Program-made: the position numbers and the translations under genes
The notes under the pieces: model-generated
Database searches by the model: none
The model's input: only the letters and a program-made list of their open reading frames with translations
Told to the model about the DNA's origin: nothing
Assembly (NCBI GenBank): GCA_001643675.2
Contig: LSRY02000036.1
Location: 124,001 to 188,000, forward strand
Direction of reading: 5' to 3'
DNA length: 64,000 nt
DNA from: Monocercomonoides exilis PA203
Taxonomy: Eukaryota; Protista; Preaxostyla
In this document: piece by piece, positions 22,330 to 45,511 of the stretch
Numbering within the stretch: the stretch's first letter is position 1
How the letters are laid out: each line of letters starts with the position of its first letter

Positions 22330-23540
22330 TATTCATCCTTTCTTGTCTGCAATTTTATGGATATTCCTCATCCATTCAGGTGGCTCTGTTTTGATGCTTG
22401 TGATCAATATCACACCATTGTCCACGTTTCTCACTGCAAGTGTTATAGGTGAGTATTTTTATTGGCACCAGTTTTTTTATTGGCACCAAAAATTATTTTC
22501 ATTATCTTTATTTCATTAAAGCTCATAAATCTGTTTCATAACTTAAGAACAATAAACAAATAAAAATTAAGCTGTACGCCAAATATTTTTTTTAAAAACT
22601 TTCTCATAAAAACGATCTAATAATTTTTAACTTTTATATTTCGATCAATGTTTTGCTCGTATTTTCTTGACTGATTGCTGTTGCGAGTTTTTATCACGGA
22701 ATTCGCAAAAACAACTGTATTTTCAGTATTTGTTACTTATTCGTTATATTTTGAACCATTTATTTAAGTATATTTTTGCATTTCACCACTTTTGTTTAAA
22801 CATGCAAAATCAAGTGAATGTGTATGTTTTGTAAAAAAATGTCTAAGGAAATTGATAAAATAATCTTTATTGTTCATTGTACATGTTTTAAAAATTAACT
22901 TTAATTCAAAATTAAAAAGAAATCAAAGGATCATGTTTTTTAAAGAATTGCATTTATTTAAGCAACGACAAATTGGCAATTATCAAATGTCAAGAACTTT
23001 GTTCTAAATACACCTTTTATATATTTTCAATTTCATGTAAGTTAATAAAACAAACACATTCACTTGATTTTGCATGTTTAAACAAAAGTGGTGAAATGCA
23101 AAAATACACTTAAATAAATAGTTCAAAATATAACGAATAAGTAACAAATACTGAAAATACAGTTGTTTTTGCGAATTCCGTGATAAAAACTCGCAACAGC
23201 AATCAGTCAAGAAAATACGAGCAAAACATTGATCGAAATATAAAAGTTAAAAATTATTAGATCGTTTTTATGAGAAAGTTTTTAAAAAAAATATTTGGCG
23301 TACAGCTTAATTTTTATTTGTTTATTGTTCTTAAGTTATGAAACAGATTTATGAGCTTTAATGAAATAAAGATAATGAAAATAATTTTTGGTGCCAATAA
23401 AAAAACTGGTGCCAATAAAAATACTCACCTATCATGTCTCATCAATTGCGGAGGTTCATTTTTAAACCAGAAAATTGACTTCATGGATATTGTCCTCTTT
23501 TTCGATAAAAATATGTGCATCAGCTTTTCCCTCTTGACAC
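22330..23540 (-). pseudogene. Decayed paralogue of the 30-aa WMRHD-repeat gene, interrupted by the foldback element
   Basis: The minus strand reads ..WFKNEPPQLMRHD immediately right of the element and ..IKTEPPEWMRNIHK to its left. Excising the element gives CAAGTGTTATATCATGTCTCATC, close to CAAGCGTTGTATCATGTCTCATC at 34480-34503. Confidence 0.8.
22448..23429. mobile_element. Non-autonomous foldback/MITE-type DNA transposon (Tc1/mariner-pogo class), 383-bp inverted arms, 216-bp spacer, TA target duplication
   Basis: 22448-22830 is the reverse complement of 23047-23429 with about 3 mismatches. TA flanks both ends (22446-47, 23430-31). Each end has two direct repeats of TTTTTATTGGCACCA. No coding capacity. 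Confidence 0.92.
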
Positions 23541-29133: not shown

Positions 29134-30767
29134 TTTCAGTTATTACATGTTCATATTCATTCTTTTCTCAACAAAATCAACGAAAAATTCAAACATCATT
29201 TATTTTCTTTCAAGAAGCAAATGCAACTTCAACACAAATTGCTTTGTTTTTTAATATAATTGTTTTTGCAATAAATGTTCAACGAGACAGCAGAGTTCGG
29301 CTGAACGAGGAAAAAACAGAAAACTTTTTGTTTCTGATTGATCAAACCAACAGAAATTCATAATGATGATATTTTCCTTTGTCTTTTTTCAATATGAAGC
29401 AAATGCATTCTGAGAATGCAATAGCAATCGCTTCTAAGATGCAAATGAAATTCTTTTTATGAGAAAATAGAAACGGGCAAATAAAACGATTCTTGAGGAA
29501 TAAATATTATTCTCATTTGGATTTATCAATTCTGACTGAAACAAGGAGAACAAATGTTTGTATGCCTTAACAATGTTATCTATTTTTAACTTGCCTTCTT
29601 TTTAATTCTTTTTTAAAAAATGACTCGTTGAACTGTTGAAGATGAAAGAATTTGACAATCAAAAAAGATAAAAAGAGCAAAAGAAAAGGGCAATTGTTTC
29701 AAAAGGATGCAAATGCAGAACAAACTAATTTGAAGAAAGAACCGAACAAAATTCGCCAAGCCCAAAATGACATTTTGGAGCTTGGAAATAAGCAAAAAAA
29801 GTTTTATTTGAGAGACCAACTCCAATAACAAAGCTTTATCATTTTGAAAATCAGACAAAGACACAACAAAAGAAGAAGCAGAAAATGACCTTTTTTTAAC
29901 TGCGAATTGTTTTGCAAATTCAACAGAAAAAGCCATTTTCCCAGATAAAACGAGACTTAAAAAAGGAAACAGCAAAAGCAACTTGGCCTTGAGAAACACA
30001 AAGATTGCGCACAAATCGCCATTTCTTATTTGGGTGAAAACAATGAACAGTCTTCAATGGAAGGAATTCATTTTTTTTTTATTTTTGGATCGCATTCAAT
30101 CTGAATGAAGGGGAACCAAATTCAATGATTCATGTTCCGATAATACCGTCAGCTCAGATGAAAGAAAAAATCGAATTATTCAATTTGTCTTGTTTGATTG
30201 AGCATTTCATGCTCAGTTGAATTCAATAGAACAGCCGAATGGATGAACAATGTTTTATCAATTGTTCCTTTTATTTCTGTATTCAACATAACTTTCCAAC
30301 AGAAAAGCCTACTTCTTCTGTGCATCTTCTTTTAATCCCACTGAATGTATTGCCAACCTCATCGTCATCGCTTTCTTCACCTTCTTCTTCCCCCTCAACT
30401 TCACTTATTTCCTTCTTTCTTCTTCTATTTCTCAATCACATCAATTCCATTTCTTCTTCTTTCTCCTTCTTCTTCAACGACTTTTCCATCAATCTCTTCG
30501 AAGATACTTCAAATTCTTCATTTTCTTCATTTTCAACAAATTCTATTTCTCCGAAGACGATTTCTCCGAACCCATTTTATAATTCTCTTCTTCATCCCTC
30601 AGAATATCCATCGGGCCATCTTTACAGTTTGCCAGCAAAAAACCCAGCAATTTTGATCGAATTTCCCATTTTTCGTCTTCTTAGCCAATTCAAAACGAAA
30701 TTGAAGAATGCAAATTTTATCCTCTTTTCGCAATCATTGTGATACCTATTTGCGTTTCATCTGTTGG

Positions 30768-31010
30768 TTCTTCTTCCTCTTCCTCTTCTTCCTCTTCTAT
30801 TTCTTCTTCCTCTTCTCCTTCTATTCCTCCTTCTTCTTCTTCTTCTTCCTTTTCTTCTTCCTCTTCTTCCTCTTCATCATCTTCTTCCTCTTCTTCCTCT
30901 TCCTCTTCTTCTTCTTCTTCTTCTTCTTCTTCTTCTTCTTCTTTTTCTTCTTCTTCTTCGCCTTCTTCGCATCCTCCTCCTCCTTCTTCTTCTTTTTCTT
31001 TTTTCATCAT
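30768..31010. repeat. (TCT/TCC)n low-complexity tract; poly-Glu on the minus strand, probable pseudogene remnant
   Basis: ORF 30717-31055(-) is nearly pure E/D; flanking frames are interrupted. Confidence 0.7.
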
Positions 31011-31154
31011 CTTTCTCATGTTCATTTTCAACATTTTGAGAATTTTAGAGAGCAAATCCTTCTCATCTGCTTGCTTCGTTTGGCGAGCAAGATGCGCTTT
31101 GACAAAGATGAAGTTTGTATCTTTGCAAAGGAATTATCCTCATCTTCTCTTCTT

Positions 31155-31189
<35 letters not shown>

Positions 31190-31899
31190 CCTCTTCTCTT
31201 CTCGAGATATCGTCATATTAACATCTTTGACAGCACCTTAACACTCCATAAAAGGAAGTATGCCGAAACAGGATGTTTCTTCTCCCTCTGAAGAAACTGT
31301 ACAAAACACAACACAAAGCAAGGAAAAGGAAGAAGAAGAAGAAGAAGAAGCGTAAAGAAAATGCGCCTTTGGCAATTTGTTTCTTCTTTCATACACATTT
31401 TGTAATTTTCCATTTGATAAGCCAAAGAAGATGGATAATGAAGAGGAAGATTGAATGCTACAGGGACTGGGGAGAGGAATGCAAATGGAAATAACATCTG
31501 GGGAAAGGAGCAGTGAACGAGCAGTTTTTGTTGACTTGTTTGCTGGAAAGATGAGTGGTTGTAGCTTTCTATCGAATTATTTGTCTTCTGCTGCGATGAG
31601 CATTCAAGATGTTGTAGAAGCACTACGAAATTGGTGTCATGGCAAACAGAAATTGAATTATGGATGTGTGGTATGATTGATGAATTCTTTCATCTGTTGC
31701 ATTTCACAAATCAAGGATTATAAGCGGAGGAAGAAGAAAAAATTGGATGTGGCTTTTATTTGAAGAAAAGAAAATGGAAATGAGGAGGAGGGAATGTTTG
31801 ATGCATATGAGGTTGCTGGTGTGCACAAGGAATGAAGAGTATTTTCATATTATAAATAATATTATTTATTTTGTTTTATTTATTTATTTATTAATTTAT

Positions 31900-31938
31900 T
31901 TATTTTTATTTTTATTTTTATTTTTATTTTTATTTTTA

Positions 31939-31988
<50 letters not shown>

Positions 31989-32340
31989 TTTATTTTTATT
32001 TTTATTTTTATTTTTATTTTTATTTTTATTTTTATTTTTATTTTTATTTTTATTTTTATTTTTATTTTTATTTTTATTTTTATTTTTATTTTTATTTTTA
32101 TTTTTATTTTTATTTTTATTTTTATTTTTATTTTTATTTTTATTTTTATTTTTATTTTTATTTTTATTTTTATTTTTATTTTTATTTTTATTTTTATTTT
32201 TATTTTTATTTTTATTTTTATTTTTATTTTTATTTTTATTTTTATTTTTATTTTTATTTTTATTTTTATTTTTATTTTTATTTTTATTTTTATTTTTATT
32301 TTTATTTTTATTTTTATTTTTATTTTTATTTTTATTTTTT
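31900..32340. repeat. (TTTTTA)n array, ~60 units, with an embedded (TTA)n block
   Basis: Directly visible; source of the spurious FL/KN ORFs. Confidence 0.97.
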
Positions 32341-33134
32341 TTTAACTCTGCAAACTGAATGAGAGTGATGGCTTGAAACACAAACATGCATTCTCAGATT
32401 GCGTAAAGACAACAATGGTTCTATTTGATATTTACACGAAAGAATTATTGGATCTTTTGGATATGAAAGTGAAGGAGATATTTTGTTGTTTGAAAAGGTG
32501 GATGCCAATCAAAATTTTATTTTCGTATTATTTTTGCGAATGAAAAAGATGCTTCTCCCTTTTCTTTTCTCATTCCTCAAATTATGTTTCTGATTGCTTT
32601 TTTTGACTTTTTTTGAAGCTTTAATATTTTTTACAACATTATGCAAATTCCAACTGTTTTTCAAAGTTTGTATTTCTAACACATCGAGTGATGAATAAAA
32701 GCACACATATCAAAAAAAAAAAAAATGAAAAATAGTATCATGAATGGAAATGTTTTCAAATTTTTGAAATATGTTTTTAGAAGATTTTTTCAGACAAAGA
32801 GAAATAACAGGTTTTGAAAGACAGCAAACTTTTAATCATCATGAAGTGATGTCTTTTGTTTGTCATCAAAGCAAAAACGTTGGAAAATGCTGAAGTGTGT
32901 CTCAAATCAACAAGCAATAAAATTAACAAACAAATACAAATTGAATGCAGAGATACAAAAATGAAAAATATCAAGCAATAAAACATCTTTAATTATTATT
33001 CTGAAAAAATGAAAAGTTGTACCAAAAAATAAGAAGAAATCAAAAAACAATTACATGACGTTCATTTCAATTGTTACATGGTATTTGTTCAGTCATCCAC
33101 ACAGCAGCCGAACAATCAAAGCAATCACTCAAAC

Positions 33135-34784
33135 TTAGTAATCCCCTTTCATCCATCCCGGAACCTCACTCTCAACATAGTTCTTCCAAAATGTCTTCAT
33201 CGTCCACCCTTCCTTGTTGCTGATGTTTGCATCGTGCCTCATCCACTCCGGAGGTTCGCTCTTAACATTCGCAATCCACAGCATCGCCATCGTCCTCCCG
33301 CTCTTGTCCACTTGTGTCGTTCTGTGCCTCATCCACTCTGGCGGTGCTGTCTTCACCCACGTAATCCAGTGCATAGCCATCGTCATTCCATTCTGGTCAA
33401 TAAATATTGCTCCGTGTCTCATCCACTCCGGAGGCTCTGTTTGCACATCCCCAATCCAATGCATCGCCATTGTCCATCCGTTCTCATCCCCAACCGTAAC
33501 CTCGTGCCGCATCCACTCTGGTGGTTCTGATTTGACGTGTCTGATCCAGTGCATCGCCATCGTCCACCCGTCCTTGTCCACTTGCATCCCCCTGTGTCGC
33601 ATCCACTCCGGCGGCTCTGTTTGCACATCCCCAATCCAGTGCATGGCCATCGTTCTCCCATACATGTCCCCACGCCCCACATCGTGCCTCATCCATTCCG
33701 GAGGTTCGCTCTTCACATTCTCTATCCACAGCATCGCCATTGTTCTTCCTTCCTCATCTCCTTCTGCCGCCTCGTGCCTCATTTCCTCTGGAGGCTCTGC
33801 TTTTTTTCCAACAATCCAGTTCATCGCCTCTGTTCTTCCATTTCTGTCATAACCTTTCGCTTTGTCCTTTCCTTCTTCACATCTTTCACATTTTCTCTCA
33901 TTTTCACAGCTCGTTCCCTCTCTTCTCTTTTCTTTATCGTGAGGTGCTTTGTCCGCCTTCATCCACTCAGGAGGGTTTGTTTTGATGTGCTTTATCCACA
34001 GCATATCCATCGTCCATCCACCATTGTTCGCAAGCGTTACGTCGTGCCTCATCCATTCCGGTGGCTCTGTTTTCACATTTTCAATCCAGATCATCGCCAT
34101 CGTCCACCCGTTCTTGTTGCGCAGAGTGATGTCATGTCTCATCCATCCCAGAACATCCGTTTTAACTTCACTTATCCACAACATGGCCATCGTCCAGCCA
34201 TCATTGTCTGCAAGTGCAGGATCGTGCCTCATCCATTCCGGTGGAGTATCTTCTTTCAAAATAATCCACTTCATTGCCATTGTTCTTCCCCAAATATCTT
34301 TAAGAGCATTATCATGTCTCATCCATTCAGGTGGTTCTGTTTTAACTTCTTGAATCCATTTCATTGCCATTGTCCATCCACAGTTATCTTTTAGTGTAAT
34401 GTCATGCCTCATCCATTCTGGAGGTTCTGTTTTGATATTCTTTATCCAACACATGGACATTGTAGATCCGTCATTATCGCCAAGCGTTGTATCATGTCTC
34501 ATCCATGCTGGTGGTTCTGTCCCTACGTTATTAATCCACTTCATTGCCATTGTCCGTCCGTCATTGCTGCCAAGTGTGACGTCGTGCCTCATCCATTCTG
34601 GCGGTTCTGTTTTTACATTATAAATCCACAACATGGCCATTGTTTCACCATAATTGTTGCGAATTGCAATATCATGTCTCATACTCTTTGGTGGTTCCGT
34701 TTCTTTGTACCTTATCCAATTCATAGCCTTGGTATTTCCATATGCATCTTTATCAGGATTCATCGCATCAACTTTATTTCCCAT
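33135..34784 (-). CDS. Tandem-repeat protein: 17 units of ~30 aa (DxxGxTMAMxWIxxVKxEPPEWMRHD), weakly ankyrin-like
   Basis: 549-aa intronless ATG ORF. Nine units, a charged linker, then eight units; 90-bp periodicity at DNA level. Confidence 0.88.
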   Translation of the reverse strand: MGNKVDAMNPDKDAYGNTKAMNWIRYKETEPPKSMRHDIAIRNNYGETMAMLWIYNVKTEPPEWMRHDVTLGSNDGRTMAMKWINNVGTEPPAWMRHDTTLGDNDGSTMSMCWIKNIKTEPPEWMRHDITLKDNCGWTMAMKWIQEVKTEPPEWMRHDNALKDIWGRTMAMKWIILKEDTPPEWMRHDPALADNDGWTMAMLWISEVKTDVLGWMRHDITLRNKNGWTMAMIWIENVKTEPPEWMRHDVTLANNGGWTMDMLWIKHIKTNPPEWMKADKAPHDKEKRREGTSCENERKCERCEEGKDKAKGYDRNGRTEAMNWIVGKKAEPPEEMRHEAAEGDEEGRTMAMLWIENVKSEPPEWMRHDVGRGDMYGRTMAMHWIGDVQTEPPEWMRHRGMQVDKDGWTMAMHWIRHVKSEPPEWMRHEVTVGDENGWTMAMHWIGDVQTEPPEWMRHGAIFIDQNGMTMAMHWITWVKTAPPEWMRHRTTQVDKSGRTMAMLWIANVKSEPPEWMRHDANISNKEGWTMKTFWKNYVESEVPGWMKGDY

Positions 34785-35024
34785 TTCCTTGTTATTTTTG
34801 AATAAACAGGCAACTGCTTGTTGCTTGCAAACAAGTGATTTAACAAAAATGTTTGATCTTTCAAGAATTCTGTTTCGTTATGGGTCTTTTGATTTTTTGG
34901 GATTGTGTTTTTGCTTTTTAAATTTTATCAACACGATGTTTGGTGATATTTTTCTCAATTTTTTGAATTTTTCTATCTTTCTTTCTTTCTGACTTTTTTT
35001 TATTTTTTAATTTTTTTTTTTTTT

Positions 35025-35082
35025 TTGTTTTGTTTTGTTTTGTTTTGTTTTGTTTTGTTTTGTTTTGTTTTGTTTTGTTTTG

Positions 35083-35113
<31 letters not shown>

Positions 35114-35136
35114 TGTTTTTGTTTTTGTTTTTGTTT
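35025..35136. repeat. (TTTTG)n followed by (TTTTTG)n
   Basis: Directly visible after a poly-T run. Confidence 0.95.
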
Positions 35137-36284
35137 CATAAACATGAAATTTCAAAATTTCATATTAAAAAAATCTTGACACTCATTACAATCAGTTTTG
35201 CAATTATAGTTTGTGTTAACAATGGTGGACACTTTCAATAACTGTGGACAGTCGCATTATCTCAACAACCATTGAAAGTTGCTTTTTGACTATAAACACA
35301 ATTATTCCTTCATTGAATATAAACCAACATGAATTGTTTTAATCATTTATCCAACACAGCGAAAAATAACAATTCTTATTTTTTATTTTCGGAGAAAATC
35401 GGAGAAATTAAATTCTTAAAGTTTCTCCGAAATTTAAAAATGTTTTATTCTTAATTCTGCAGAGCAAGTTGTTTCATTTCTGTATGTCTCACAAGTTCAT
35501 ATGGGGCAAAATATTTCACTTCAAGCATTTTCATTGAAAAATAATGCACTTTTCATTGACTTTTTTTTATCAAAAAAACTCAATAAGAATGGGTCCATTT
35601 TTTGATATTCGTGAAATGTTGGAAAACTTAATGTTTTAATTTCAACGATGCCTGTTTGCAGATTTGAAAATCAAATTTATTTTGAAATCTGAGAAAGTGT
35701 GGTAATGTAATTAGAAAAACATTTTTTTCATGCTTTGTGCATAAAAAGCTTGAAAGTCCGTATTTTCCCCCATTTGAATTAAATAGGTCGAAAGATAAGC
35801 TAACAAAAGCGTATTGTCTTAAATAATTAACGTTCTATAAGTCATCATCAGATTTATGAAATGTTTTTCAATGATAATGTGTAAAAATAAAAACAATGAA
35901 TAATATTTTTAAAACAATATTGGGAACGGAATGATCAACATTTTTTGATCATTTTCGATCTCTTTTTCAGATCAGTTAAACGTTTGTAACTTTTCCAAAA
36001 GAATGACCAATATAAGGAAAAGTCAGCAATTAGAATTTCAGATTAAATTACTATACGTAATCTCTGATGGTGGGAGATGGAAGTGTTAGCTCCTCCATCT
36101 CTGATTGGTGCCTCCACTGAGGAGATTAGGTGATACCAAGGGGTATTTCTAAGTTGGAATATTATCGAAAATTTTTTTGATTTTTTTTTCTTTTCAAACA
36201 AAAATGTTTTTACAAAATAAAAATTAGATCATTACCAGAATATTTTTGTTATGAGCGTTATCAAAAAACAAAACAGGACAAGGA

Positions 36285-37846
36285 TTGTTTAATGGAAGAA
36301 ATCAAATGATGGCATTTAACTATAGACAAATAGAAAATCGTTTGGAGCGGATTGCAACAATAGTTTTGGATGGAAAGGCAATGACAGTGGATGAAGCGAA
36401 TCTACACGAGTTCAGCCGTTCAGCCATAAATAGAGCAATTGCAGCTTTGGAAAACAAAAGAAAAGTCGGCAAAATTGGTCACACAGAGTTGCTAACAGAC
36501 GAAGAAAAGAAAACAGTTGAGGATGATATTGGCTGCGAAAGTTCAAGTGGAGTGAGCATTTCTGTTTCTCAAATGAAACAATTTGTTTGTTTTTTCTTAT
36601 ATCAACAAACATTTTTTTTGTTGTCTTATTTTAGATGAAATCTGTCATTTCTGATAGAAAAAAAAATCTATTTGAAGAAGAAAAAGAAAAAATTGAAAAT
36701 TTGAAGTCAACGCTCTTCTCATTCATTAAAAGGAATCCACACATTTAATTGTCTCTTCTAAGAAACGTTGATATTCAACGATTAACTGTTTCAAATAAAC
36801 AAACACTCCAGCCTTTCTTCGAACTTCTTCAACATCTTCATTATACTTACAAATATTCTTCTTCATTGATATTCAATACTGACGAATCTTGCCTTCGCCT
36901 CTCAGATACAACCAAAAAGCTTGTTGTGCATCCTTTTAATTCACCAGCTGGATTTAACAGAACACACACGAACATGCCAAACGCCACATTGTGCGTTGCA
37001 GCTGCTGCAGATGGTTATTCTTTGAAAAGTATCGTTTTATGGCCTTCGAAGAAGATTTCAGCCGAACTGCGTGTGATGCTCAGCTCGTCAATAAATATCT
37101 GGGAAGACAACGATGGCTGGACGACCGACGTAATATTAAGAAGATATGCAAAAGATATTCTCCTTCCAAGAATCGTGGAAAGACGAACTCTTTTAGACAA
37201 AGATGAAGAAAGATGCCTTCTTCTGTTGGATTCTCATCCATCGAGAGCACAGCCAGACATTTGGAAAAAATTCGCCGATGCCTCCATCAATGTGGTGACT
37301 TTCATCCCTCACAGCACACATTTCGCTCAGTCTCTCGACCGTGGAGTATTTACCGTCCACAAAAAATGTTTTAACACAAAATATGTCGTTCCTTCTTCTT
37401 CTTCTGTCTCTCTTCGAAGAAAAGCAATTGCAGATGCCCTTCCTCAGGCTCTGCAAACAGCATAATTGCCTGAAACAATTGTTTCTTCGTTTGTCAAAAG
37501 TGGAGTGTTTTCAAATGAATGGAATGCTGTTCTTTCCTCTTTACATGATGAGCCTACTGTGACACTGAAGAATAAGAACCACAGATTTGATTTTCATGGG
37601 AAAATGATTACCGACCAAGATTTTTTGGATGAACGGAGAAATCAAAAGAAAATGAAAGAAGAGAAGATAAGGAATGATGATAATGAAAAAAAACTGTGGA
37701 AAAAATTGTTTGAGGATGATAAACCAAAGAAAAAGAAAATTCCACGAAAAAAAGTGTTTATTGATGATTATTCTGGTGATGAAAGAATACAAGAAAATTC
37801 CAGAAAAATAATCAAAAGAGAGTTAATTGACTCTATTTATTTCTAG
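36285..37846 (+). mobile_element. pogo/Fot1-like (DDE_1, CENP-B family) transposase, DD35D, interrupted by two in-frame TAA codons
   Basis: IFNTDES (D1), GWTT, LLLLDSHPSR (D2), PHSTHFAQSLD (D3, 35 residues after D2), TIVSSFVKSGVF. N-terminal HTH-like FSRSAINRAI..GH..LLTDEEK. Probable intron ~36584-36634. TAA at 36746-48 and 37463-65. Confidence 0.88.
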
Positions 37847-38398
37847 TATTTTTTATTTTAAATAGAAACAAACATGCTTTCGTGAAATTGAAATTTTTTA
37901 TTTTTTCTTTCGCATATGAAAAAAAAAACCGGATTAAAAATACCACTTTAATTAATTTCGATTGAATTGTCTGTCGACTTGTCGAGTCATATGAAGAATG
38001 TCGGTCTGCAGAGAGGTATAATTCCATGAATAAAAATATAACGGTTATTTGAGACATGAATTTAAATTTTTTGTTTTCAAAATTTTGTTCCACACTGTTC
38101 TTTCAAAGATTTTTCTCAACTTTTAAAAATTATTTAATTTGATATTTCATAAAATGTCAGTTTCGTAGTTATTCGATCACAGAAAAAGTTTGGAACTAAT
38201 TATTGAATTTAACATTAACACAAAAGTTTTGACCCGCAAAAGAATAATTGAAAAATTTGTTCGTATAAAGGTTTATCAGATCTTAAACATTCAATAATTA
38301 TTTTTTATTTAAATCAAATAAAAGATTTGAAGATAATAAAATTGCATACTAACTATAATAAAACACATTCGCACATTTATTAAAAAGAATACATATTA

Positions 38399-40285
38399 AT
38401 GACCGCTTTTTGTTCTTTATCTGATGATTATGCTGAACGTTTGAATGACAGTCACACTCCATTATTACCAACGTTAATATCATGCCAAAATATGGAAAGT
38501 TCATCAGAAAATGTTTCAAAAGGAGAAAATAATTCGGAAAACGTTATGACTGGGCGTTTGATGCCTCAGATTAATATTTCTCAATATTCTCCAAGCCCTT
38601 CTGACTTTGATGGACATTTTAGAAGAAGAGTTAGCACTGTGATTGATAGCATCGATTCATCTTCTTCACTTTTTGTTACAACACCCCGTTGCATTGATGA
38701 GAGGCGTGGATCTGCAGTGTCGCCTGTTACAGAGCTTTCTGACGATTTGGCGACAGCAGAACCGCGCATCATGATGTCAAATCAACTTTTGAAACCATAT
38801 GAGTCAGGGATAACTGAATTTCCATCGTTTATCGAAACAAATTTGAAAAATGAAGAAGATAAACAAAAAAAGAAGGGGAAAAAGAAATATAAGAGGAAGA
38901 AAAAGGCTCAGGCAGATACTGCTTCTAAAATTCAACCAACGCTCCAAATTAATTTGAAGTCTCGAAGCCAATTGCCAATATCACCTTCTTCTAGATCTTC
39001 ACCACAACTTTTATGCCAATCACCATCTTCACCATCAAAAAGCCGAATGCCATCGTCTCGCCAAGGAAACTTTGAAAATCCTGTTTCATCAAAAAATCAT
39101 GAAACTTCGCGAATCGAAAAAGTCAATTCTGCGCCTGTGACATTCCAAGGAGGGTACCAGTCTGGGTCCCAAGCAAAGGCGTCGTTCCAGTTGTCTTCAA
39201 GCCATCTTCCGCATTCGCCCAGTGCGCATTCGATGAAGCTGAGCACACACTCGCCCAGTGCAAGGCACGCCTCGTCAGGCCATCCGCTCACCCCGTCGTC
39301 GGTGGCGTCTGCCAGCAGCGTCTCCTTCACCGACACCCAAACACCCACACCTCCTCCTCCTCCCATTCATCCTCCTCATCCTCCGTCTCCTTCTCTTTCT
39401 CTGACTCTTTCTCAGCGTCCTCTTTCTGCGAAGAGCAAGAAAGGGAAGGTGCAGAAGCAGAGCGTGAAGGCTAATGCATCGGCCAATCATTCAGAAACGG
39501 GCCATGTGGAAGCAGGCGGAGCGGAAGCACACAAGAATTCAGATGCTGTTCAGGTGAAGAATATCGAAGGAAAGAGGAAGGAGAAAGAGAAAGAGAAAGA
39601 GAAAGAGAAAGAGAAAGAGAAAGAGAAAGAGAAGGAGAAAGAAAAAGGAGAAGGAGAAGGAGATGGAGATGGAAAAGGAGAAGGGAGAGGAAGAGAAGAG
39701 GAAAAGAGAAAGATTGAGAATGAAAACAAAGAGGATGTGAAAGATGAGGAAAATCAAGAGAATCACAAAGAAGAGGAAGAAGATGATGAAGAAAGAGAAA
39801 GAGAAGGAGAAAAAGAAGAAAGAGAAAGAGAAGGAGAAAATGAAGAAAAAGAACAAGAAGATGAGCCAAAACAAGAGCAAAAAGAAGAAGCAAAAGAAGA
39901 AGCAAAAGAAGAAAAGAAAGACGAGAGAAGCCGAAGGCTGTTAGAAGTGATGAAGACGTTCCCCATTGAAAATGATGATTGGAGGAATGAGAAAGAGGAA
40001 GACAGGAGAAGAGCCGAATATCGAATGAAGGCGATGGAGATAGAGAGGAAGAGGAGGGAGCAGGTGATTCGGAGAGCGAGGGAAAAGAGGGAGGCAAGGG
40101 AAGCGAAGAGGAAGGAGAGAGAGAAAGAGAAAGAGAAAGAGAAAGAGAGAGAGAAGGAGAAGGAGAAGGAGAAGAAGGAGAAGGAGAAAGAAAGGAAACA
40201 GCAAGAAAACAATACGAATGGCGAAGGAAAAGGAAAAGATAACAAAAATAATGAAGAAGATGAAGAAGAAGAAGATGATGAAGGA

Positions 40286-40318
<33 letters not shown>

Positions 40319-40985
40319 GAAGAGGAAGAAGAAGAAGCAACACAGGAAGAAGGAGAAAACGACGAAGAAGGAGAAGAAGAAAGAGAAGAAGAAGATGAAA
40401 GCAAATCCCACAAATCCAAACACAAAAAGCTTCAATCATCATCATCATCACCTTCTTCTTCTTCTTCTTCTTCTTCTTCATCTAGATATCATTCTGAAGG
40501 AGAAATACAAAACACACAAAACACACAAAACACACAAAACACACAAAACGCTCCAACAACACCTTCTTCAATTGCTTCTTCAGTTGCCTCTTTTTCTGCT
40601 TCTTTTGCTTCTTCAAACAAAATTTCCTCGCCTTCTTCGCATTCTCGTTGCTCAGTTAGCAGAAAAACAGCGAAACAAAGTAATGTGACAAACAATGGAA
40701 CAAACAATGGATTGAATGCTGGAGTTAATGGAAATTCGAATTCTTCTTCTTCTTCTTCTTCTTCACATTCTTCTTCCTCTTCTTCTCCTTCCTTCTCCTC
40801 TTCTTCATCCTCAAATTCATCATCATCATCATCATCATCAACAACAACAACAACACCTCATCCTCTTTCTCCTTCCTCTCCTTCTTCCATTTCTTCTCTT
40901 TCTTCTTCTTCTTCTCCATTTCACATCCAGTCTCACTCACACTCACATGCATTTCATTCTTATACTGGCAAGTCATCATCTTTTT

Positions 40986-41016
<31 letters not shown>

Positions 41017-44000
41017 TTCTTCCTCCTCTTCTTCCTCTTCCTCTTCTTCTTCTTCTTCTTCTTCTTCCTCCTCTTCCTCTACTCTTTCTCCTTCTCTCTC
41101 TCGTTCTGTTTCAATTCCATCTTCTCAGAGCAACACATCAAAAACACGCATTCATCAATCAAGTAATAGCAGCAATAATAATAATAATAATAACAGAGAA
41201 AGAGAAGGAGGAAGAGAAAGAGAAGGAGAAAGAGAAAGAGAAAGAGAAAGAGAAAGAGAAAGAGAAAGAGAAAGAGAAAGAGAAAGAGAAAGAGAAAGAG
41301 AAAGAGAAAAAGAAAGCAATAAACCTTCTTCTTCTTCTTCTTCTTCTGATGTGAATAAAGGGAAAGAAACATCAACATCTCAACAAACTCTTTCACCAAC
41401 AAGCACATCAAATTCTTCTTCACTTTCTTCTTCTTCACTTTCTTCTTCTTCACTTTCTTCTTCTTCTTCTTCTCATCCTCATCCTCCTCATCTTCCTTCT
41501 CTTCCTCATCTTCCTCTTCCTCTTCCTCCTGCTTCATCATCATCTTTTTCTTCTTCTTCCTCTTCTTCTTCCTCTTCCTCTTCTTCTTCTTCAGACATTC
41601 AATCTTCTCATACATTTTCTTCTCCTCTTTCTCCATCGACTCCACTCACTCCAGTCACTCCTGCTACCACATCCTCACAACAGCTCTGTATTTCTCCTTT
41701 CGCTCCTTCTTCTTCCTCTTCTTCTTCTTCCTCTTCTTCCTCTTCCTCTTCTTCTTCTTCCTCTTCTTCTTCTTCCTCATCTACTTCTTCCTCTTCTTCT
41801 TCACATTCTTCTTCCTATCCTTCGTCATCATCTTCTTCTTCCTCTTCCTCTTCCTCCTCTTCCTCTCATCCAAAGAGCTATTCCCCCCTCATTCCCAATT
41901 CGTTAGTCTATTTCACTGCACAGCAGACACAGAAAGTCAAAGAAATGTCACAAATTGCGATGCTTCAGAACGAAATGAGCCAAAATACAGAAGATTTGAA
42001 GAAGGAGGAGAAGGAGGAGAAGAGGGAGGATAGAGAGGAGAGAGAAAAAGAGAAAGAAGCGAAAGAAAAGGTGATGAAGGAGAAAGAGGAGAAAGAGGAG
42101 AAAGAAAAGGAAAAGGAGAAGATATTGAATGCTGAATTAATTACAGGAGGAGGAGAAAGAGAAAGAGAAAGAGAAAGAGAAAGAGAAAGAGAAAGAGAAA
42201 GAGAAAGAGAAGGAGAAAGAACAGAAATAACAACGAAGAAAGAAAAAGATAAAAAGAAGGAAGTTAAAGCACCGATTAAACATAAACATAAGCACAAAAA
42301 ATTGTATTTTGTTTCTTCGTCTGGAACGAAAAGGAAGATTATGAGGGTAAGGGAAGAAGAAGAAGGAGAAGGAGGAGAAGAGAAAGAAGAGAAAGAAGAA
42401 AAAATTAAAAAGAAAAGATTTGCGGATAAGAACAATAAAGAAGATGCAGAAACAGTTAAATCTAATGAACATAGAAACAACAACAACAACAATAATAATA
42501 ATAATAGCATGAAAAATAACCTTGTTTATGATTCATCAGTGAATGCATTAGAAGGAAGAAAAAGAGGAAGAGGAGAAAGAGGAGAAAGAGAAGAAGAAGA
42601 AGAAGAATTACCTTCTGGATTTTCTTTCCATCATCATCATCATCATCATCATGAACAAAATGAACAAAATGACAATGATCAAGATGAATTTGAAGAATAT
42701 CATCAACGTTATAATGAAGCATATGATAAAGATGATGATAAAGAAAGCTACAATCAGCATCATGATGATAATGAAGATGGATATGAAGAAGAAATTTTAG
42801 ATATAGATAAAAATAACGATGATCAAGAATATAACAGCCATCATCATCATTATCACCAACATAATAATAATCATGATGATGATGATGCTGCTGCTGCCGA
42901 TGTTAATGATGTTCACTATCATCAACAACATTATCAACATCATATTCGTCCAATGGAAAGAGGTATGCAAATTCATTTGCGCAAATCTCGCTCTTTCTCT
43001 CCCCCAAAAGTGAGCAATTTGATGGAGGAAGAGAGAAGAAGAGAAGAAGGAGAAGAAGGAGAAGAAGAAGAAAGGGAAGGAGAAAGAGAAAGAGAAAGAG
43101 AAAGAAGAAGAGGAAGATCAGTTTCTGTAGAGAAAAGCGATAAAACACATTTATATCCATTTAACAACACTTCATCCTCTTCTCCCTCATCATCATCATC
43201 ATCTTCTTCTTCTTCTTCCTCCTCATCTTCCTCTTCTTCTTCTCCCCTTTCCCCCAAATCTCTTTCCTTATTTTCTTCTCCCCAGAACAAGATGATTCAC
43301 AGCAAAAGAACCAAAAATTTCGCATTGCGCTTTCGTTCTCCTCTTCCTTATGCCATTCAATCGTTCTTTCCTGTTAGATCTGTGGCATATCAGGAGATGA
43401 ATAGAGAAGGAGAAGAAGAAGGAAGAAGAGGAAGAGGAAGAGGAAGAAGAGAAGGAGAAGAAGATAAAGTGGATGAAGAAATAGGAGCTTGGAAAGAGGC
43501 AGAAATAGAAGAAAGAGAAGAAAGAGAAAGAGAAAGAGGAGGAGAAAGAGGAGAAAGAGGAGAAAGAGGAGAAGGAGAAGGAGAAGAAGAACAAGCAATT
43601 AATTTCAATTCTTATGAGAATTATACATATCAGCAACATCCACACACCCCAATCATACCAAAATCTGCTTTTGTCGATGAAGAAATTGAAGTGAAAGAGA
43701 AAGAAGAAAAAAGGAACGAAGAAGAAGAAGAAGAAGGAGGAGGAGAAGGAGAAGGAAAAGAAGAAGAAGAAGAAGAATTAAAAGAGGAAAATGGAAAATT
43801 TAATGAAGATAACGAAAAATTGATAACTTCTGAGATATTGTTATCACCATATGCATCTTCTTCTTCCTCTTCTTCCTCTTCTTTTTCACCAAAAACTTCT
43901 TCTTCTTCTTCCTCTTCCTCCTCTTTCTCTTCTTCTCCTTCTCACATCACCAAACTTTCTCCTTCCCAAGTCCAAACAGACCCTCTCTTGAAAGCCTTTC

Positions 44001-44131
44001 TTTCAGGCGAAGAACTCAAATTCCTCTTAAAAGTAGCTAAGCATTCATCATCATCTTCTTCTTCATCTTCTCATTCTTCTCACTATCCTTCTTCTTCTTC
44101 TCACTATCCTTCTTCTTCTTCTCACTATCCT

Positions 44132-44163
<32 letters not shown>

Positions 44164-45511
44164 TTCTTCCAATCGTAACTCTTCTTCTCCTCAGAAACGA
44201 AGCAATTTCCGTGACGAAATAAAGAAGCTCATAGGATTTCGACAGCATCCAATGAAATTGAATGAAAAAGAGAGAAAGAAAGAGAAAGAGAAGAAAGAGA
44301 AAGAGAACAGAATGAGGGAAAGGAACATGCAGATGAAGCAATATCAACAAGAACAAAAGGATAGAGAAAGAGAAAGAGAAAGAGAAAGAGAAAGAGAAAG
44401 GGAAAGAGAAAGGGAAGGAGAAAGAAGAGAAAGAGGAGGAAGAGGAAGAGGAGAAGAAGAAGAAAGAATTGTTATGTCTTCTGTTGAAAAACATGAAGAT
44501 AACACCAAAAATAGCAACTATATTGATGATGATGCTTTCATTTCACACAACATACAAACACCTCAAAATGATTCTTCTTCTTCTTCCTCCTCTTCCTCTT
44601 CCTCTTCCTCTGTCACATCACCATCACCATCATCATCCTCCTCTTCTCCTTCACATCCATCTTCCTCTTCTTCCTCTCCATCTCATCCATCTTCTTCTTC
44701 TTCCTCCTCCTCCTCCTCTTCTTCTCTTCCCTTCTCCAACCAGAATTCACCCACTCTTTCAGACATCAGCTCTTCTGTGGCCTCATTCCACTCAACAACT
44801 GCAACAGGAGAGAAGAACGATATATTCTATGGATTGGTACATAGAGAAGGAGAAGGAGAAAGAGAAGGAGAAGGAGAAAGAGGAGAAGAAAAGGAAGAAG
44901 AAAAGGAAGAAGGAAAGGAAAGAGAAAGAGGAGAAGAAAGAGGAGAAAAGGAAGGGAAGGAAGAAAAAGAAAAAGGAGAAGGAGAAGGAGCAAAAGGAGA
45001 AGAAGGAGAAGAAAGAGAAGGAGGAGAAGAAGAAGAAGACAAGTTTTTGCCTCATCCACAGCAGATTGTCTTCTCACCAATGGCAACACGACCACTCACT
45101 CACCAAAGTTCAGCTTCTTTTCTTTCATATCAATTTCCTATTCCTCTTCCTCCTGCTTCTTCTTTATCTTCTTCTTCCTCTTCTTCTTCATTCATTTCAC
45201 CTCTGTTTTCTTCATCATCATCATCTTCTTTCTCTTCGTCTTCTTCCACATCTTCTTTAAAGCCCTGTTCTTCTGTCGGTTCGCTCGTTTTCTCACCTGC
45301 TGCCTCTCCTTCTATCACACCTTCTCTATTAACCTATGAAGTTTCACTGCTTCGTGAGGAGATATCGAAAATGGCGATGCAGATGGAAGAGCTGAGGAAG
45401 GAGAACAAGAATCACGTGATGCAGAACGAAGAGCTGAAGAAAGTGATAGAGACGCTGCAGATACAGAAGAAGGAGAAAGAGGAGATGAAAGAGGAGGACG
45501 AGAAAAAGTAA
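38399..45511 (+). CDS. Giant low-complexity protein (2370 aa): alternating poly-Ser, Glu/Lys/Arg (RE, KE) and His/Asn tracts; C-terminal coiled coil
   Basis: 7.1-kb stop-free ATG ORF with unique-sequence ends (C-terminal EVSLLREEISKMAMQMEELRKENK). Confidence 0.75.

What the first reader, a model, noticed from the sequence alone, without database searches (positions are those of the whole stretch)
33135..34784. Protein made of 17 copies of a 30-aa Trp/Met-rich repeat: a possibly undescribed solenoid family with hypervariable positions
Seen: a highly conserved scaffold GxTMAMxWIxx(V/I)KxEPPEWMRH, with variation concentrated at the residue after MAM (N/L/K/C/I/H), the two residues after WI (RY, YN, NN, KN, QE, IL, SE, EN, KH, VG, GD, RH, TW, AN) and the loop after WMRH. 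Established: DxxGxT is how ankyrin repeats begin, but ankyrins are 33 aa with a TPLH helix and a second Leu-rich helix; here the second half is replaced by EPPEWMRHD. Inference: a shortened ankyrin-derived or independent repeat. A fixed scaffold with a few variable residues per unit is the layout of modular recognition proteins (TALE, PPR, LRR). There is no signal peptide, TM segment or catalytic domain.
Basis: partly seen in the sequence, partly recalled or inferred. Interest (0 to 1): 0.8.

Follow-up and report, generated by a model that had tools for sequence, protein, structure and literature searches.

The report
Shortened 30-residue ankyrin-type repeat protein
This intact gene encodes a 65-kDa protein made of 17 very regular 30-residue repeats that are a shortened, Met/Trp-rich form of the common ankyrin protein-binding repeat; it is one of roughly 100 such genes in this gut protist, an unusual variant of a familiar fold and not a new recognition code.

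Summary
Window 33135-34784 (minus strand) is an intact 549-aa ORF with 17 units in exact 30-residue phase: 9 units, a disordered charged linker of exactly 30 residues, then 8 units.

Pfam, NCBIfam and PDB sequence searches find nothing for this protein. The AlphaFold model (pLDDT 86) matches only ankyrin solenoids, unit for unit: Foldseek E 1e-15, VIA Z 16.4, Atlas TM 0.71. Helix 1 is kept and helix 2 is cut to one turn.

Weak sequence links agree:
- Profile-profile comparison gives P 0.0015, above all controls.
- Of 110 outside relatives, 8 reach Pfam Ank_2 at E<=0.001 and 11 carry a RING finger. No other repeat family is hit.

The variable positions fall on ankyrin's own variable, binding-face columns. 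They show no TALE-like code (107 residue pairs at two positions), and the protein is acidic.

Nine close paralogues share the linker and units 6-17 under purifying selection (dN/dS 0.24). Units 2-5 differ between all of them.

The genome's size and contig count match the published Monocercomonoides exilis assembly. It holds 1159 exact PPEWMRH-coding sites.

This scan had already found the family on other DNA of this genome and read it the same way. Expression could not be tested. Verdict: a new variant of a known kind, of modest interest.

The parts
33135..34784 (-). Whole coding sequence, 549 aa plus stop, no intron needed
   Evidence: ORF list. Translation and unit phase. 100% self-match with no internal stop in the genome search.
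34752..34784 (-). N-terminal 11 residues beginning MGN, conserved in the subfamily and in other family members
   Evidence: Alignment A1. N-termini of 30 paralogous ORFs.
34662..34751 (-). Unit 1 (res 12-41), N-terminal cap-like unit (G-x-T-K-A-M-N-W-I)
   Evidence: Its best DNA match is 88%, to unit 1 of paralogue L007. Conserved in A1.
34302..34661 (-). Units 2-5 (res 42-161), the variable cassette: unit number and sequence differ between all close paralogues
   Evidence: dS about 1.1 between paralogues. Best DNA matches are 77-83% inside the subfamily and 82-89% to units of other family genes. A1 shows indels of about one or more whole units, though not all cleanly unit-sized.
33942..34301 (-). 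Units 6-9 (res 162-281), conserved between paralogues
   Evidence: 96-99% DNA identity to subfamily counterparts. dS 0.31, dN/dS 0.24. pLDDT mostly 84-96.
33852..33941 (-). Linker (res 282-311), K/E/R/C-rich, exactly one unit long, predicted disordered
   Evidence: 60-residue anchor gap. pLDDT 24-32. Conserved in all ten subfamily members, dN/dS 0.47.
33138..33851 (-). Units 10-17 (res 312-549), the conserved C-terminal array ending in a cap unit (T-M-K-T-F-W-K ... V-P-x-W-M-K)
   Evidence: 93-100% DNA identity to subfamily counterparts for units 10-16. dN/dS 0.12-0.34. GC3 0.63 against 0.36 in the N-part. Aligns to ankyrin domains at Z 12-14, rmsd 2.8-4 A.
32761..33134 (-). 3' flank shared with the close paralogues (probable 3' UTR)
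   Evidence: blastn of window 30000-38000 against the paralogue loci: similarity runs about 380 bp past the stop.
34785..34885 (-). 5' flank shared with the close paralogues (probable promoter/5' UTR)
   Evidence: blastn similarity starts about 100 bp before the ATG in most paralogues.

Best explanation
The gene encodes a cytosolic alpha-solenoid built from a shortened ankyrin-type repeat of 30 residues instead of 33. Each unit keeps the ankyrin finger loop (D-x-x-G-x-T) and the inner helix (T-M-A-M-x-W-I-x-x in place of T-P-L-H-x-A-A-x-x). The outer helix is cut to a single turn (P-P-E-W-M-R-H), and the core is filled with Met and Trp instead of Leu/Ala/Val.

The units stack into two arrays, 9 and 8 units long, joined by a flexible charged linker. 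As in ordinary ankyrin domains, the loop tips and the exposed face of the inner helix (unit positions 1, 3, 4, 6, 11, 14, 15) most likely form a protein-binding surface.

Within a subfamily of about ten genes, units 6-17 and the linker are kept. This is probably a module that binds a shared partner. Units 2-5 are a private cassette in each gene, probably giving paralogue-specific binding.

Shown here: the repeat anatomy, the predicted fold and its exclusive match to ankyrins, the family size, purifying selection, and the mosaic N-terminal cassette. Inferred: common descent from ankyrin, protein binding, and the two-module division of labour.
For: Fold:
- AlphaFold2 gives mean pLDDT 86.4. Every unit is an 8-9-residue helix, a 3-residue helical turn and a loop.
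- The top 50 listed Foldseek PDB hits are all ankyrin or DARPin, with AnkB at E 1.2e-15; 320 hits reach E<=0.001.
- VIA-align against 48,161 chains, run without Foldseek, returns 50 listed entries, of which all titles I can place are ankyrin domains or DARPin fusions. RNase L ANK scores Z 16.4, with model residues 6-277 (9 units) on chain residues 21-322, about nine 33-residue repeats by length. Nas6p scores Z 13.2, rmsd 2.9 A over 191 residues.
- All ten ESM Atlas neighbours are ankyrin clusters, TM up to 0.71 over 501 residues.

Sequence:
- The nearest language-model cluster is ankyrin, score 0.92, 172 of 256 features shared.
- A family profile with Neff 7 against this genome's own canonical ankyrins gives hhalign P 0.0015-0.003, score 19.5-20.2. 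The maximum over 30 column shuffles is 9.5 and the reversed control gives 10.3. The 3-residue gap falls in helix 2.
- Of 110 outside relatives, the only Pfam families hit are RING (11) and Ank_2 (8, best 6e-7).
- P0006 is a strong family member (E 8e-65) and passes Pfam's Ank_2 cut-off (29.8 against 27.3 bits).

Binding face:
- hhalign pairs this family's variable positions 11, 14 and 15 with unconserved columns of the ankyrin profile.
- Positions 11 and 14/15 sit on one face of the helix (i, i+3/4).

Selection and family:
- dN/dS is 0.24 over units 6-17: 0.14 at scaffold sites and 0.56 at variable sites.
- None of the 150 listed genomic matches has an internal stop.
- The genome has 1159 exact PPEWMRH-coding sites, against 0 for the control pattern.
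Against: - This protein itself hits no Ank model at E<=1.
- A four-unit profile finds no ankyrin among PDB sequences.
- The narrow family profile against ankyrin gave only P 0.033.
- The unit is 30 residues, not 33, and the TPLH signature is absent.
- The fold is a prediction made with a shallow alignment of 24 sequences, and AlphaFold may favour ankyrin for anything carrying D-x-x-G-x-T.
- The family profile also scored a Sel1 protein and an Ig-like repeat protein at E 1e-19 and 1e-17 by summing many stretches. Its hits on long canonical ankyrins therefore cannot be counted as proof.
- No binding partner, localisation or transcript was examined.
Confidence: 0.78

Rival explanations
1. An independent alpha-solenoid that converged on an ankyrin-like shape: a genuinely new repeat family sharing only a G-x-T turn with ankyrin.
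For: There is no direct Pfam or PDB sequence match for this protein. It differs in unit length, has no TPLH, has a Met/Trp core, and its outer helix is reduced to one turn. The profile-profile signal is weak.
Against: Ank_2 is the only repeat family that any of 110 relatives reaches, and one passes the curated cut-off. The hhalign register is the expected one and beats all 31 controls. Model units align repeat for repeat with ankyrin domains over lengths equivalent to 5-9 units. Language-model neighbours are all ankyrin.
Confidence: 0.12
2. A programmable, TALE/PPR-like reader in which the variable residues of each unit specify one base or one residue of a linear target.
For: The units are perfectly regular, with variation confined to a few positions.
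Against: There is no restricted code: 107 residue pairs at positions 14/15, the top four covering 25%, and 410 of 463 seven-position combinations distinct. The protein is acidic, pI 5.9, net charge about -12. The fold is ankyrin-like, not TALE, PPR or PUF. Relatives are fused to RING fingers, an architecture typical of E3 ligases, where repeat arrays usually recognise protein substrates (my knowledge; the fusions are).
Confidence: 0.03
3. A non-functional, selfishly amplifying coding repeat: part of the 'unclassified repeats' of this genome, or a decaying pseudogene.
For: About 46% of the published M. exilis assembly is repetitive, mostly unclassified, and its authors suspect that expanded gene families are hidden there (PMC8767320). 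The gene is flanked by microsatellites, and a transposase fragment lies 2 kb away. Expression was not tested.
Against: The ORFs are intact in all 30 loci examined and none of the 150 listed matches has a stop. dN/dS is 0.12-0.34 with dS 0.15-0.3 in the C-terminal half. Unit-specific surface residues are 90% conserved between paralogues. The shared flanks are only about 100 bp at the 5' end and 380 bp at the 3' end, which is UTR-sized and not a transposon.
Confidence: 0.05

Closest known systems
Ankyrin repeat (Pfam clan Ank: PF00023, PF12796, PF13637), especially the 'G-x-T-A-L-M-x-A' type common in protists and bacteria
   Same: It shares the D-x-x-G-x-T finger loop followed by a 7-9-residue inner helix. 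The units stack into a curved solenoid that superposes on ankyrin domains unit for unit. Variable positions fall on unconserved ankyrin columns. Terminal cap units are present. Relatives have a C-terminal RING, an architecture also seen in canonical ankyrin proteins such as P0066.
   Different: The unit is exactly 30 residues, not 33. The outer helix is reduced to one turn after a P-P motif. TPLH is replaced by T-M-A-M, and the core is Met/Trp instead of Leu/Ala/Val. The phase is exact, with no indel between unit anchors in this gene. Every Pfam Ank model misses this protein.
DARPins (designed consensus ankyrin repeat proteins)
   Same: Both have an idealised, near-identical scaffold with diversity confined to loop-tip and helix-1 surface positions. 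By my register mapping, positions 1, 3, 4, 6, 14 and 15 correspond to the DARPin randomised positions 33, 2, 3, 5, 13 and 14. The position list is from memory of Binz et al. 2003 and was not checked here. DARPins are among the best structural matches (Z 11.5-15.4, rmsd 2.7-3.8 A).
   Different: This is natural, not designed, and is 30 residues, not 33. It has an extra variable position inside helix 1 (position 11). The arrays have 9 and 8 units, against 2-3 internal repeats in a DARPin.
TALE and PPR repeat proteins
   Same: Only the general layout is shared: many near-identical units with a few variable residues.
   Different: The fold is different. There is no small repertoire of specificity residues, the surface is acidic, and there is no evidence of nucleic-acid binding.

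Membership tests
Ankyrin repeat superfamily | Repeat unit of about 33 residues | tested here: not met
   All 17 units are in exact 30-residue phase. Outside relatives show 29-31-residue spacing.
Ankyrin repeat superfamily | Helix-turn-helix plus finger loop, stacked into an L-section solenoid | tested here: inconclusive
   The predicted model (pLDDT 86) has the loop and the inner helix, but the outer helix is only one turn. The overall shape matches ankyrin solenoids only (Z up to 16.4, TM up to 0.71). This is a prediction, not a solved structure.
Ankyrin repeat superfamily | Signature G-x-TPLH-x-A-A motif | tested here: not met
   G5 and T7 were required by the pattern used to collect units, so their invariance is by construction. 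The next residues, which were not required, are M-A-M-x-W-I. Only G-x-T and the hydrophobic pattern of the helix are kept.
Ankyrin repeat superfamily | Significant match to curated Ank profiles | tested here: not met
   This protein and seven M. exilis paralogues have no Ank hit at E<=1; the outside relative P0002 shows only Ank_5 at E 0.047. Ank_2 scanned over the whole genome does not touch any family locus. Among outside relatives, 8 of 110 hit Ank_2 at E<=0.001. In a separate scan, the relative P0006 passes the Ank_2 cut-off.
Ankyrin repeat superfamily | Profile-profile similarity in the correct register | tested here: met
   hhalign gives P 0.0015-0.003, score 19.5-20.2, against at most 10.3 in 31 controls. 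G-x-T and helix 1 are aligned and a 3-residue gap falls in helix 2. The signal is weak but specific.
TALE/PPR-type modular nucleic-acid readers | Small set of specificity residues forming a code, and a basic nucleic-acid-binding surface | tested here: not met
   107 residue pairs at positions 14/15, the top four covering 25%. pI 5.9, net charge about -12.
Leucine-rich repeat | LxxLxLxxN beta-strand motif forming a parallel beta-sheet | tested here: not met
   The model has no beta-strands, only isolated bridges. There is no LRR Pfam hit, and Leu is only 2.6% of residues.

The most novel reading that the evidence does not exclude
The family is a diversified binding repertoire. About 100 genes exchange 30-residue units in register, so that each gene of a subfamily pairs a conserved C-terminal array and linker, acting as an anchoring or signalling module, with a private, shuffled N-terminal cassette acting as a recognition module. 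This would be functionally comparable to other cassette-shuffled receptor families, and it is built on a minimal ankyrin unit that current domain models cannot see.
Probability: 0.12. Interest if true: 0.65.

Novelty: new variant of a known kind. Interest (0 to 1): 0.3.

Why it matters
The result shows that a large gene family escapes every curated domain model, although it is a recognisable derivative of the commonest eukaryotic protein-binding repeat. The family has about 1,160 exact-consensus units, probably about 2,000 units in roughly 100 genes, in a model amitochondriate protist. More than 100 representative clusters of relatives occur in metagenomes. A dedicated profile would annotate these genes and account for some of the 'unclassified repeats' of this genome.

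For repeat-protein engineers, a natural, exactly phased 30-residue ankyrin with a one-turn outer helix and a Met/Trp core is a possible minimal scaffold. It does not open a new mechanism or settle a long-standing question.

Tried and rejected
- Direct sequence routes failed. Pfam, NCBIfam and phmmer against PDB gave nothing on the protein. A four-unit profile against PDB sequences returned only chance titin hits at E>0.1. The narrow M. exilis profile against the genome's own ankyrins gave P 0.033.
- The word-index search of 5.8 billion proteins returned only two relatives. The exhaustive profile search was needed to see the wider family.
- I rejected the profile's hits on long canonical ankyrins (E 1e-23 to 1e-11) as evidence. 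A Sel1 protein and an Ig-like repeat protein scored similarly through many summed stretches.
- Spurious Pfam 'hits' with 0 stretches on paralogues (YycE-like_C, DUF4926, ASCH) are repeat-summing noise.
- Testing positive selection in units 2-5 between close pairs was impossible, because no pair has dS<0.5 there.
- Model coordinates are not exposed. Mapping the variable residues onto a surface therefore rests on the hhalign register and helix periodicity, not on measured solvent exposure.
- The neighbouring ORFs gave no functional link.
Full report
**1. The observation**

Window 33135-34784 on the minus strand is a single open reading frame of 549 codons with an ATG start. In the translation, G-x-T anchors recur every 30 residues exactly. 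There is one spacing of 60.

The layout is:
- an 11-residue N-terminus beginning MGN;
- nine units (res 12-281);
- a K/E/R/C-rich stretch of exactly 30 residues (282-311);
- eight units (312-549), the last a 28-residue cap.

The DNA shows 90- and 180-bp periods at only 66-79% match. The repeats are therefore old and maintained at the protein level. The plus-strand ORFs across the same DNA are repeat shadows.

I collected 463 distinct units from 30 paralogous loci and wrote the unit as xDxxGxTMAMxWIxxVKTEPPEWMRHDITL. The scaffold positions have less than 0.6 bit of entropy. Positions 1, 4, 6, 11, 14 and 15 have 3.0-3.7 bits and position 3 has 2.4 bits. It missed only the variable residue between G and T. 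The protein has 9.7% Met and 7.5% Trp, and its pI is 5.9.

**2. The genome and the family**

The window is contig C32:124001-188000 of an assembly of 82,301,135 bases in 101 contigs. The published long-read assembly of Monocercomonoides exilis has 101 contigs. Its 37.83 Mb of repeats make up 45.97% of the assembly, which implies 82.3 Mb (PMC8767320). Earlier notes of this scan name the same organism. I take the identification as very likely, although it rests on assembly statistics alone.

The protein finds 241 matches in its own genome. None of the 150 listed has an internal stop. By my hand count of contig and frame length in that list, they fall in at least 59 different open frames, about 22 of them on contig C80. 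A degenerate DNA pattern for PPEWMRH occurs 1159 times, against 0 for the control pattern. About half of all units carry that exact heptapeptide. By my extrapolation the genome therefore holds roughly 2,000 units, or about 100 genes.

This scan had already met the family on other DNA of this genome. Several follow-ups read it as a shortened ankyrin. I treated those notes as leads and repeated the tests.

**3. What the unit is**

Sequence-only methods fail on this protein:
- Pfam and NCBIfam give no hit at E<=1 apart from noise.
- No PDB chain is found by phmmer.
- A profile of 96 four-unit segments finds only chance titin hits.
- Pfam Ank_2, scanned over the whole genome in six frames, finds 34 canonical ankyrin stretches and none of the family loci.

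The AlphaFold2 model, built with 24 family sequences, is confident: mean pLDDT 86.4, with 357 residues at 90 or above. Every unit is an 8-9-residue helix starting after the conserved Thr, then a three-residue helical turn at E-W-M, then a loop. The linker is disordered, pLDDT 24-32.

Three structural searches all point to ankyrin:
- Foldseek against the PDB returns 320 hits at E<=0.001, and the top 50 listed are all ankyrin or DARPin chains. The best is AnkB at 1.2e-15.
- VIA-align, run independently of Foldseek on 48,161 representatives, gives RNase L ANK at Z 16.4. Model residues 6-277 (nine units) lie on chain residues 21-322, about nine 33-residue repeats by length. Nas6p scores Z 13.2 with rmsd 2.9 A over 191 residues, and DARPins score Z 11.5-15.4. 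All listed titles that I can place are ankyrin domains or DARPin fusions.
- The ten nearest ESM Atlas clusters are all ankyrin, with TM by query up to 0.71 over 501 residues.

The predicted fold is therefore an ankyrin solenoid whose outer helix is cut down.

**4. Common descent or convergence**

Four sequence-level results point to descent.

(a) Wider family. An exhaustive profile search of 1.84 billion representatives finds 281 proteins at E<=0.001 and 155 at E<=1e-10. Of the 151 proteins held (150 from this search plus P0001), 111 carry the T..M.WI...PP motif with 29-31-residue spacing. When 110 of these are scanned with Pfam, the only families hit are RING fingers (11 proteins) and Ank_2 (8 proteins, best 6e-7). 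No other repeat class appears. P0006 matches the family at E 8e-65 and passes Pfam's Ank_2 cut-off with 29.8 bits against 27.3. It lies on a compact eukaryotic contig next to ISCU, Rpb10, an Rce1-like protease and EF-hand genes. That contig probably comes from another organism, because M. exilis is described as lacking mitochondrial hallmark proteins, which by my knowledge include ISCU (PMC8767320).

(b) Profile-profile comparison. A broader family profile (146 segments, Neff 7.2) was compared with a profile of this genome's own canonical ankyrins. It gives P 0.0015-0.003 and score 19.5-20.2. The highest score over 30 column-shuffled controls is 9.5, and the reversed control gives 10.3. The alignment pairs G-x-T with G-x-T and helix 1 with TPLHxAA, and it places a three-residue gap in helix 2.

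(c) Language-model features. The nearest cluster is ankyrin at 0.92 with 172 of 256 features shared, and all ten neighbours that carry a family are ankyrin.

(d) Cap unit. The terminal cap unit (T-x-x-x-aromatic-W ... P-x-W-M-K) is shared by M. exilis genes and the outside relatives P0001, P0003 and P0004.

Against descent:
- The narrow profile gave only P 0.033.
- The family profile also scored a Sel1 protein and an Ig-like repeat protein at 1e-19 and 1e-17 by summing many stretches. I therefore do not count its hits on long canonical ankyrins.

I put ankyrin ancestry at roughly 0.8 and convergence at about 0.12.

**5. The variable positions**

In the hhalign register, positions 11, 14 and 15 pair with unconserved columns of the ankyrin profile: the x in TPLHxAA and the two residues after AA. 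Positions 1, 3, 4 and 6 flank the Gly of the finger loop. By my mapping, six of the seven correspond to the positions randomised in DARPins (33, 2, 3, 5, 13, 14). That list is from memory of Binz et al. 2003 and was not verified here. Positions 11 and 14/15 are i and i+3/4 on one helix face. Model coordinates are not exposed by the tool, so solvent exposure could not be measured.

There is no code-like restriction. Positions 14/15 show 107 residue pairs, with the top four covering 25%. Of 463 seven-position combinations, 410 are distinct.

The positions are diverse between units but not fast-evolving. Across nine close paralogues, the 84 variable-class columns of units 6-17 keep the majority residue in 90% of sequences. 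dN/dS there is 0.56, against 0.14 at scaffold sites, and no position exceeds 0.7 of the overall dS. That is the pattern of a fixed, unit-specific binding surface under purifying selection.

**6. This gene and its subfamily**

Nine paralogues at 77-87% identity, plus one at 63%, share the same build, including the linker. Most of their lengths (519, 549, 579, 609 aa) differ by multiples of 30 residues, which suggests unit gain and loss in register. The two longest (641 and 643 aa) also carry a 2-residue C-terminal extension.

Units 6-16 have 93-100% identical DNA counterparts in other subfamily members. Units 2-5 reach only 77-83% inside the subfamily and match as well or better (82-89%) to units of other family genes. 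Synonymous divergence is about 1.1 in units 2-5 and 0.15-0.31 in units 6-17. No pair of paralogues has dS<0.5 in the N-part.

Third-position GC is 0.63-0.71 in the C-terminal array and 0.35-0.41 in the N-part. The more distant member L009 has 0.37 in its C-array. This fits GC-biased gene conversion homogenising the C-terminal half, but I did not test that directly.

Similarity between paralogous loci extends only about 100 bp upstream and about 380 bp downstream of the CDS. That is the size of untranslated regions, not of a mobile element.

**7. Mechanism**

Most likely the protein is a soluble scaffold that binds other proteins through the groove formed by the loop tips and the inner helices, as ankyrin domains do. 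This is established knowledge for the ankyrin family and an inference here.

The conserved array and linker probably hold a partner common to the subfamily. The private cassette of units 2-5 probably confers gene-specific binding.

In about a tenth of the outside relatives, the same array ends in a RING finger. By general knowledge of RING E3 ligases, this suggests the repeats serve as substrate-recognition modules in those organisms. No RING was found in the eight M. exilis members scanned.

**8. Surroundings**

The gene sits between a (TTTTAT)n tract at 32000-32343 and a (TTTTG)n tract at 35013-35136. A DDE_1 transposase fragment lies at 36749-37465. A 2370-codon ORF without any Pfam hit lies at 38399-45511. 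None of these suggests a functional link.

**9. Limits**

- The fold is predicted, not solved.
- The organism name rests on assembly statistics and on earlier notes of this scan.

**10. Verdict**

This is a new variant of a known kind: a 30-residue ankyrin subtype that curated models miss, already met repeatedly by this scan in the same genome. Interest is modest.

Noticed in passing
window 33138-33851 versus 34302-34751; loci L002-L010: Third-position GC is 0.63-0.71 in the C-terminal array of the nine close paralogues but 0.35-0.41 in their N-terminal part. It is 0.37 in the C-array of the more distant member L009. Together with the low dS there, this looks like GC-biased gene conversion homogenising half of the gene.
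   Followed up: partly
window 34752-34784; L002-L008, L010, L012, L013, L016, L022, L030: A conserved N-terminus MGNK(V/A)(D/G)... is shared by the subfamily and several other family genes. Variants such as MGNKAGS and MGNKVGS fit the PROSITE N-myristoylation pattern as I recall it, while this gene's MGNKVDA does not. This raises the possibility of membrane anchoring for part of the family.
   Followed up: no
window 33852-33941: The disordered charged linker is exactly 30 residues, so the two arrays stay in unit phase. It may be a degenerated 18th unit. It contains three Cys and K/R clusters and is conserved in all ten subfamily members.
   Followed up: partly
P0001, P0003, P0004 (L031, L064; JGI metagenome 3300042618): These outside relatives consist of 29-31-residue units of the same type followed by a C-terminal RING finger. 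In all, 11 of 110 relatives have this architecture, which suggests E3 ligases with this array as the recognition domain.
   Followed up: partly
L032 (ENA ERZ27247346 k141_514601) and L033: The relative P0002 lies on a metagenomic contig with tightly packed, same-strand, partly overlapping ORFs that have no Pfam hits. The upstream ORF shows a faint Ank_2 match. The origin (virus, or a compact eukaryote) is unknown.
   Followed up: partly
G000 contig C80: By my hand count, about 22 of the 59 or more distinct family open frames in the listed matches lie on one contig, C80. They include an inverted pair of 859-codon frames at about 92 kb and 101 kb.
   Followed up: no
window 38399-45511 (+): A 2370-codon uninterrupted ORF has no Pfam family at E<=0.001.
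   Followed up: no
window 36749-37465 (+): A fragment of a DDE_1 (pogo/Tc1-type) transposase, E 5e-12. Another first-stage note records a foldback element at 22446-23431.
   Followed up: no
P0093, P0111: The four-unit family profile scored a Sel1/TPR protein (E 1e-19, 8 stretches) and an Ig-like repeat protein (E 1.5e-17, 14 stretches). Whole-sequence E-values of repeat profiles on long repeat proteins are therefore not trustworthy.
   Followed up: yes
window 33230-33740 and 34048-34702: A 180-bp (two-unit) higher-order period is seen in the DNA. Units 12 and 14 are each other's best intra-gene match, at 77% DNA identity, which suggests growth by two-unit duplications.
   Followed up: partly
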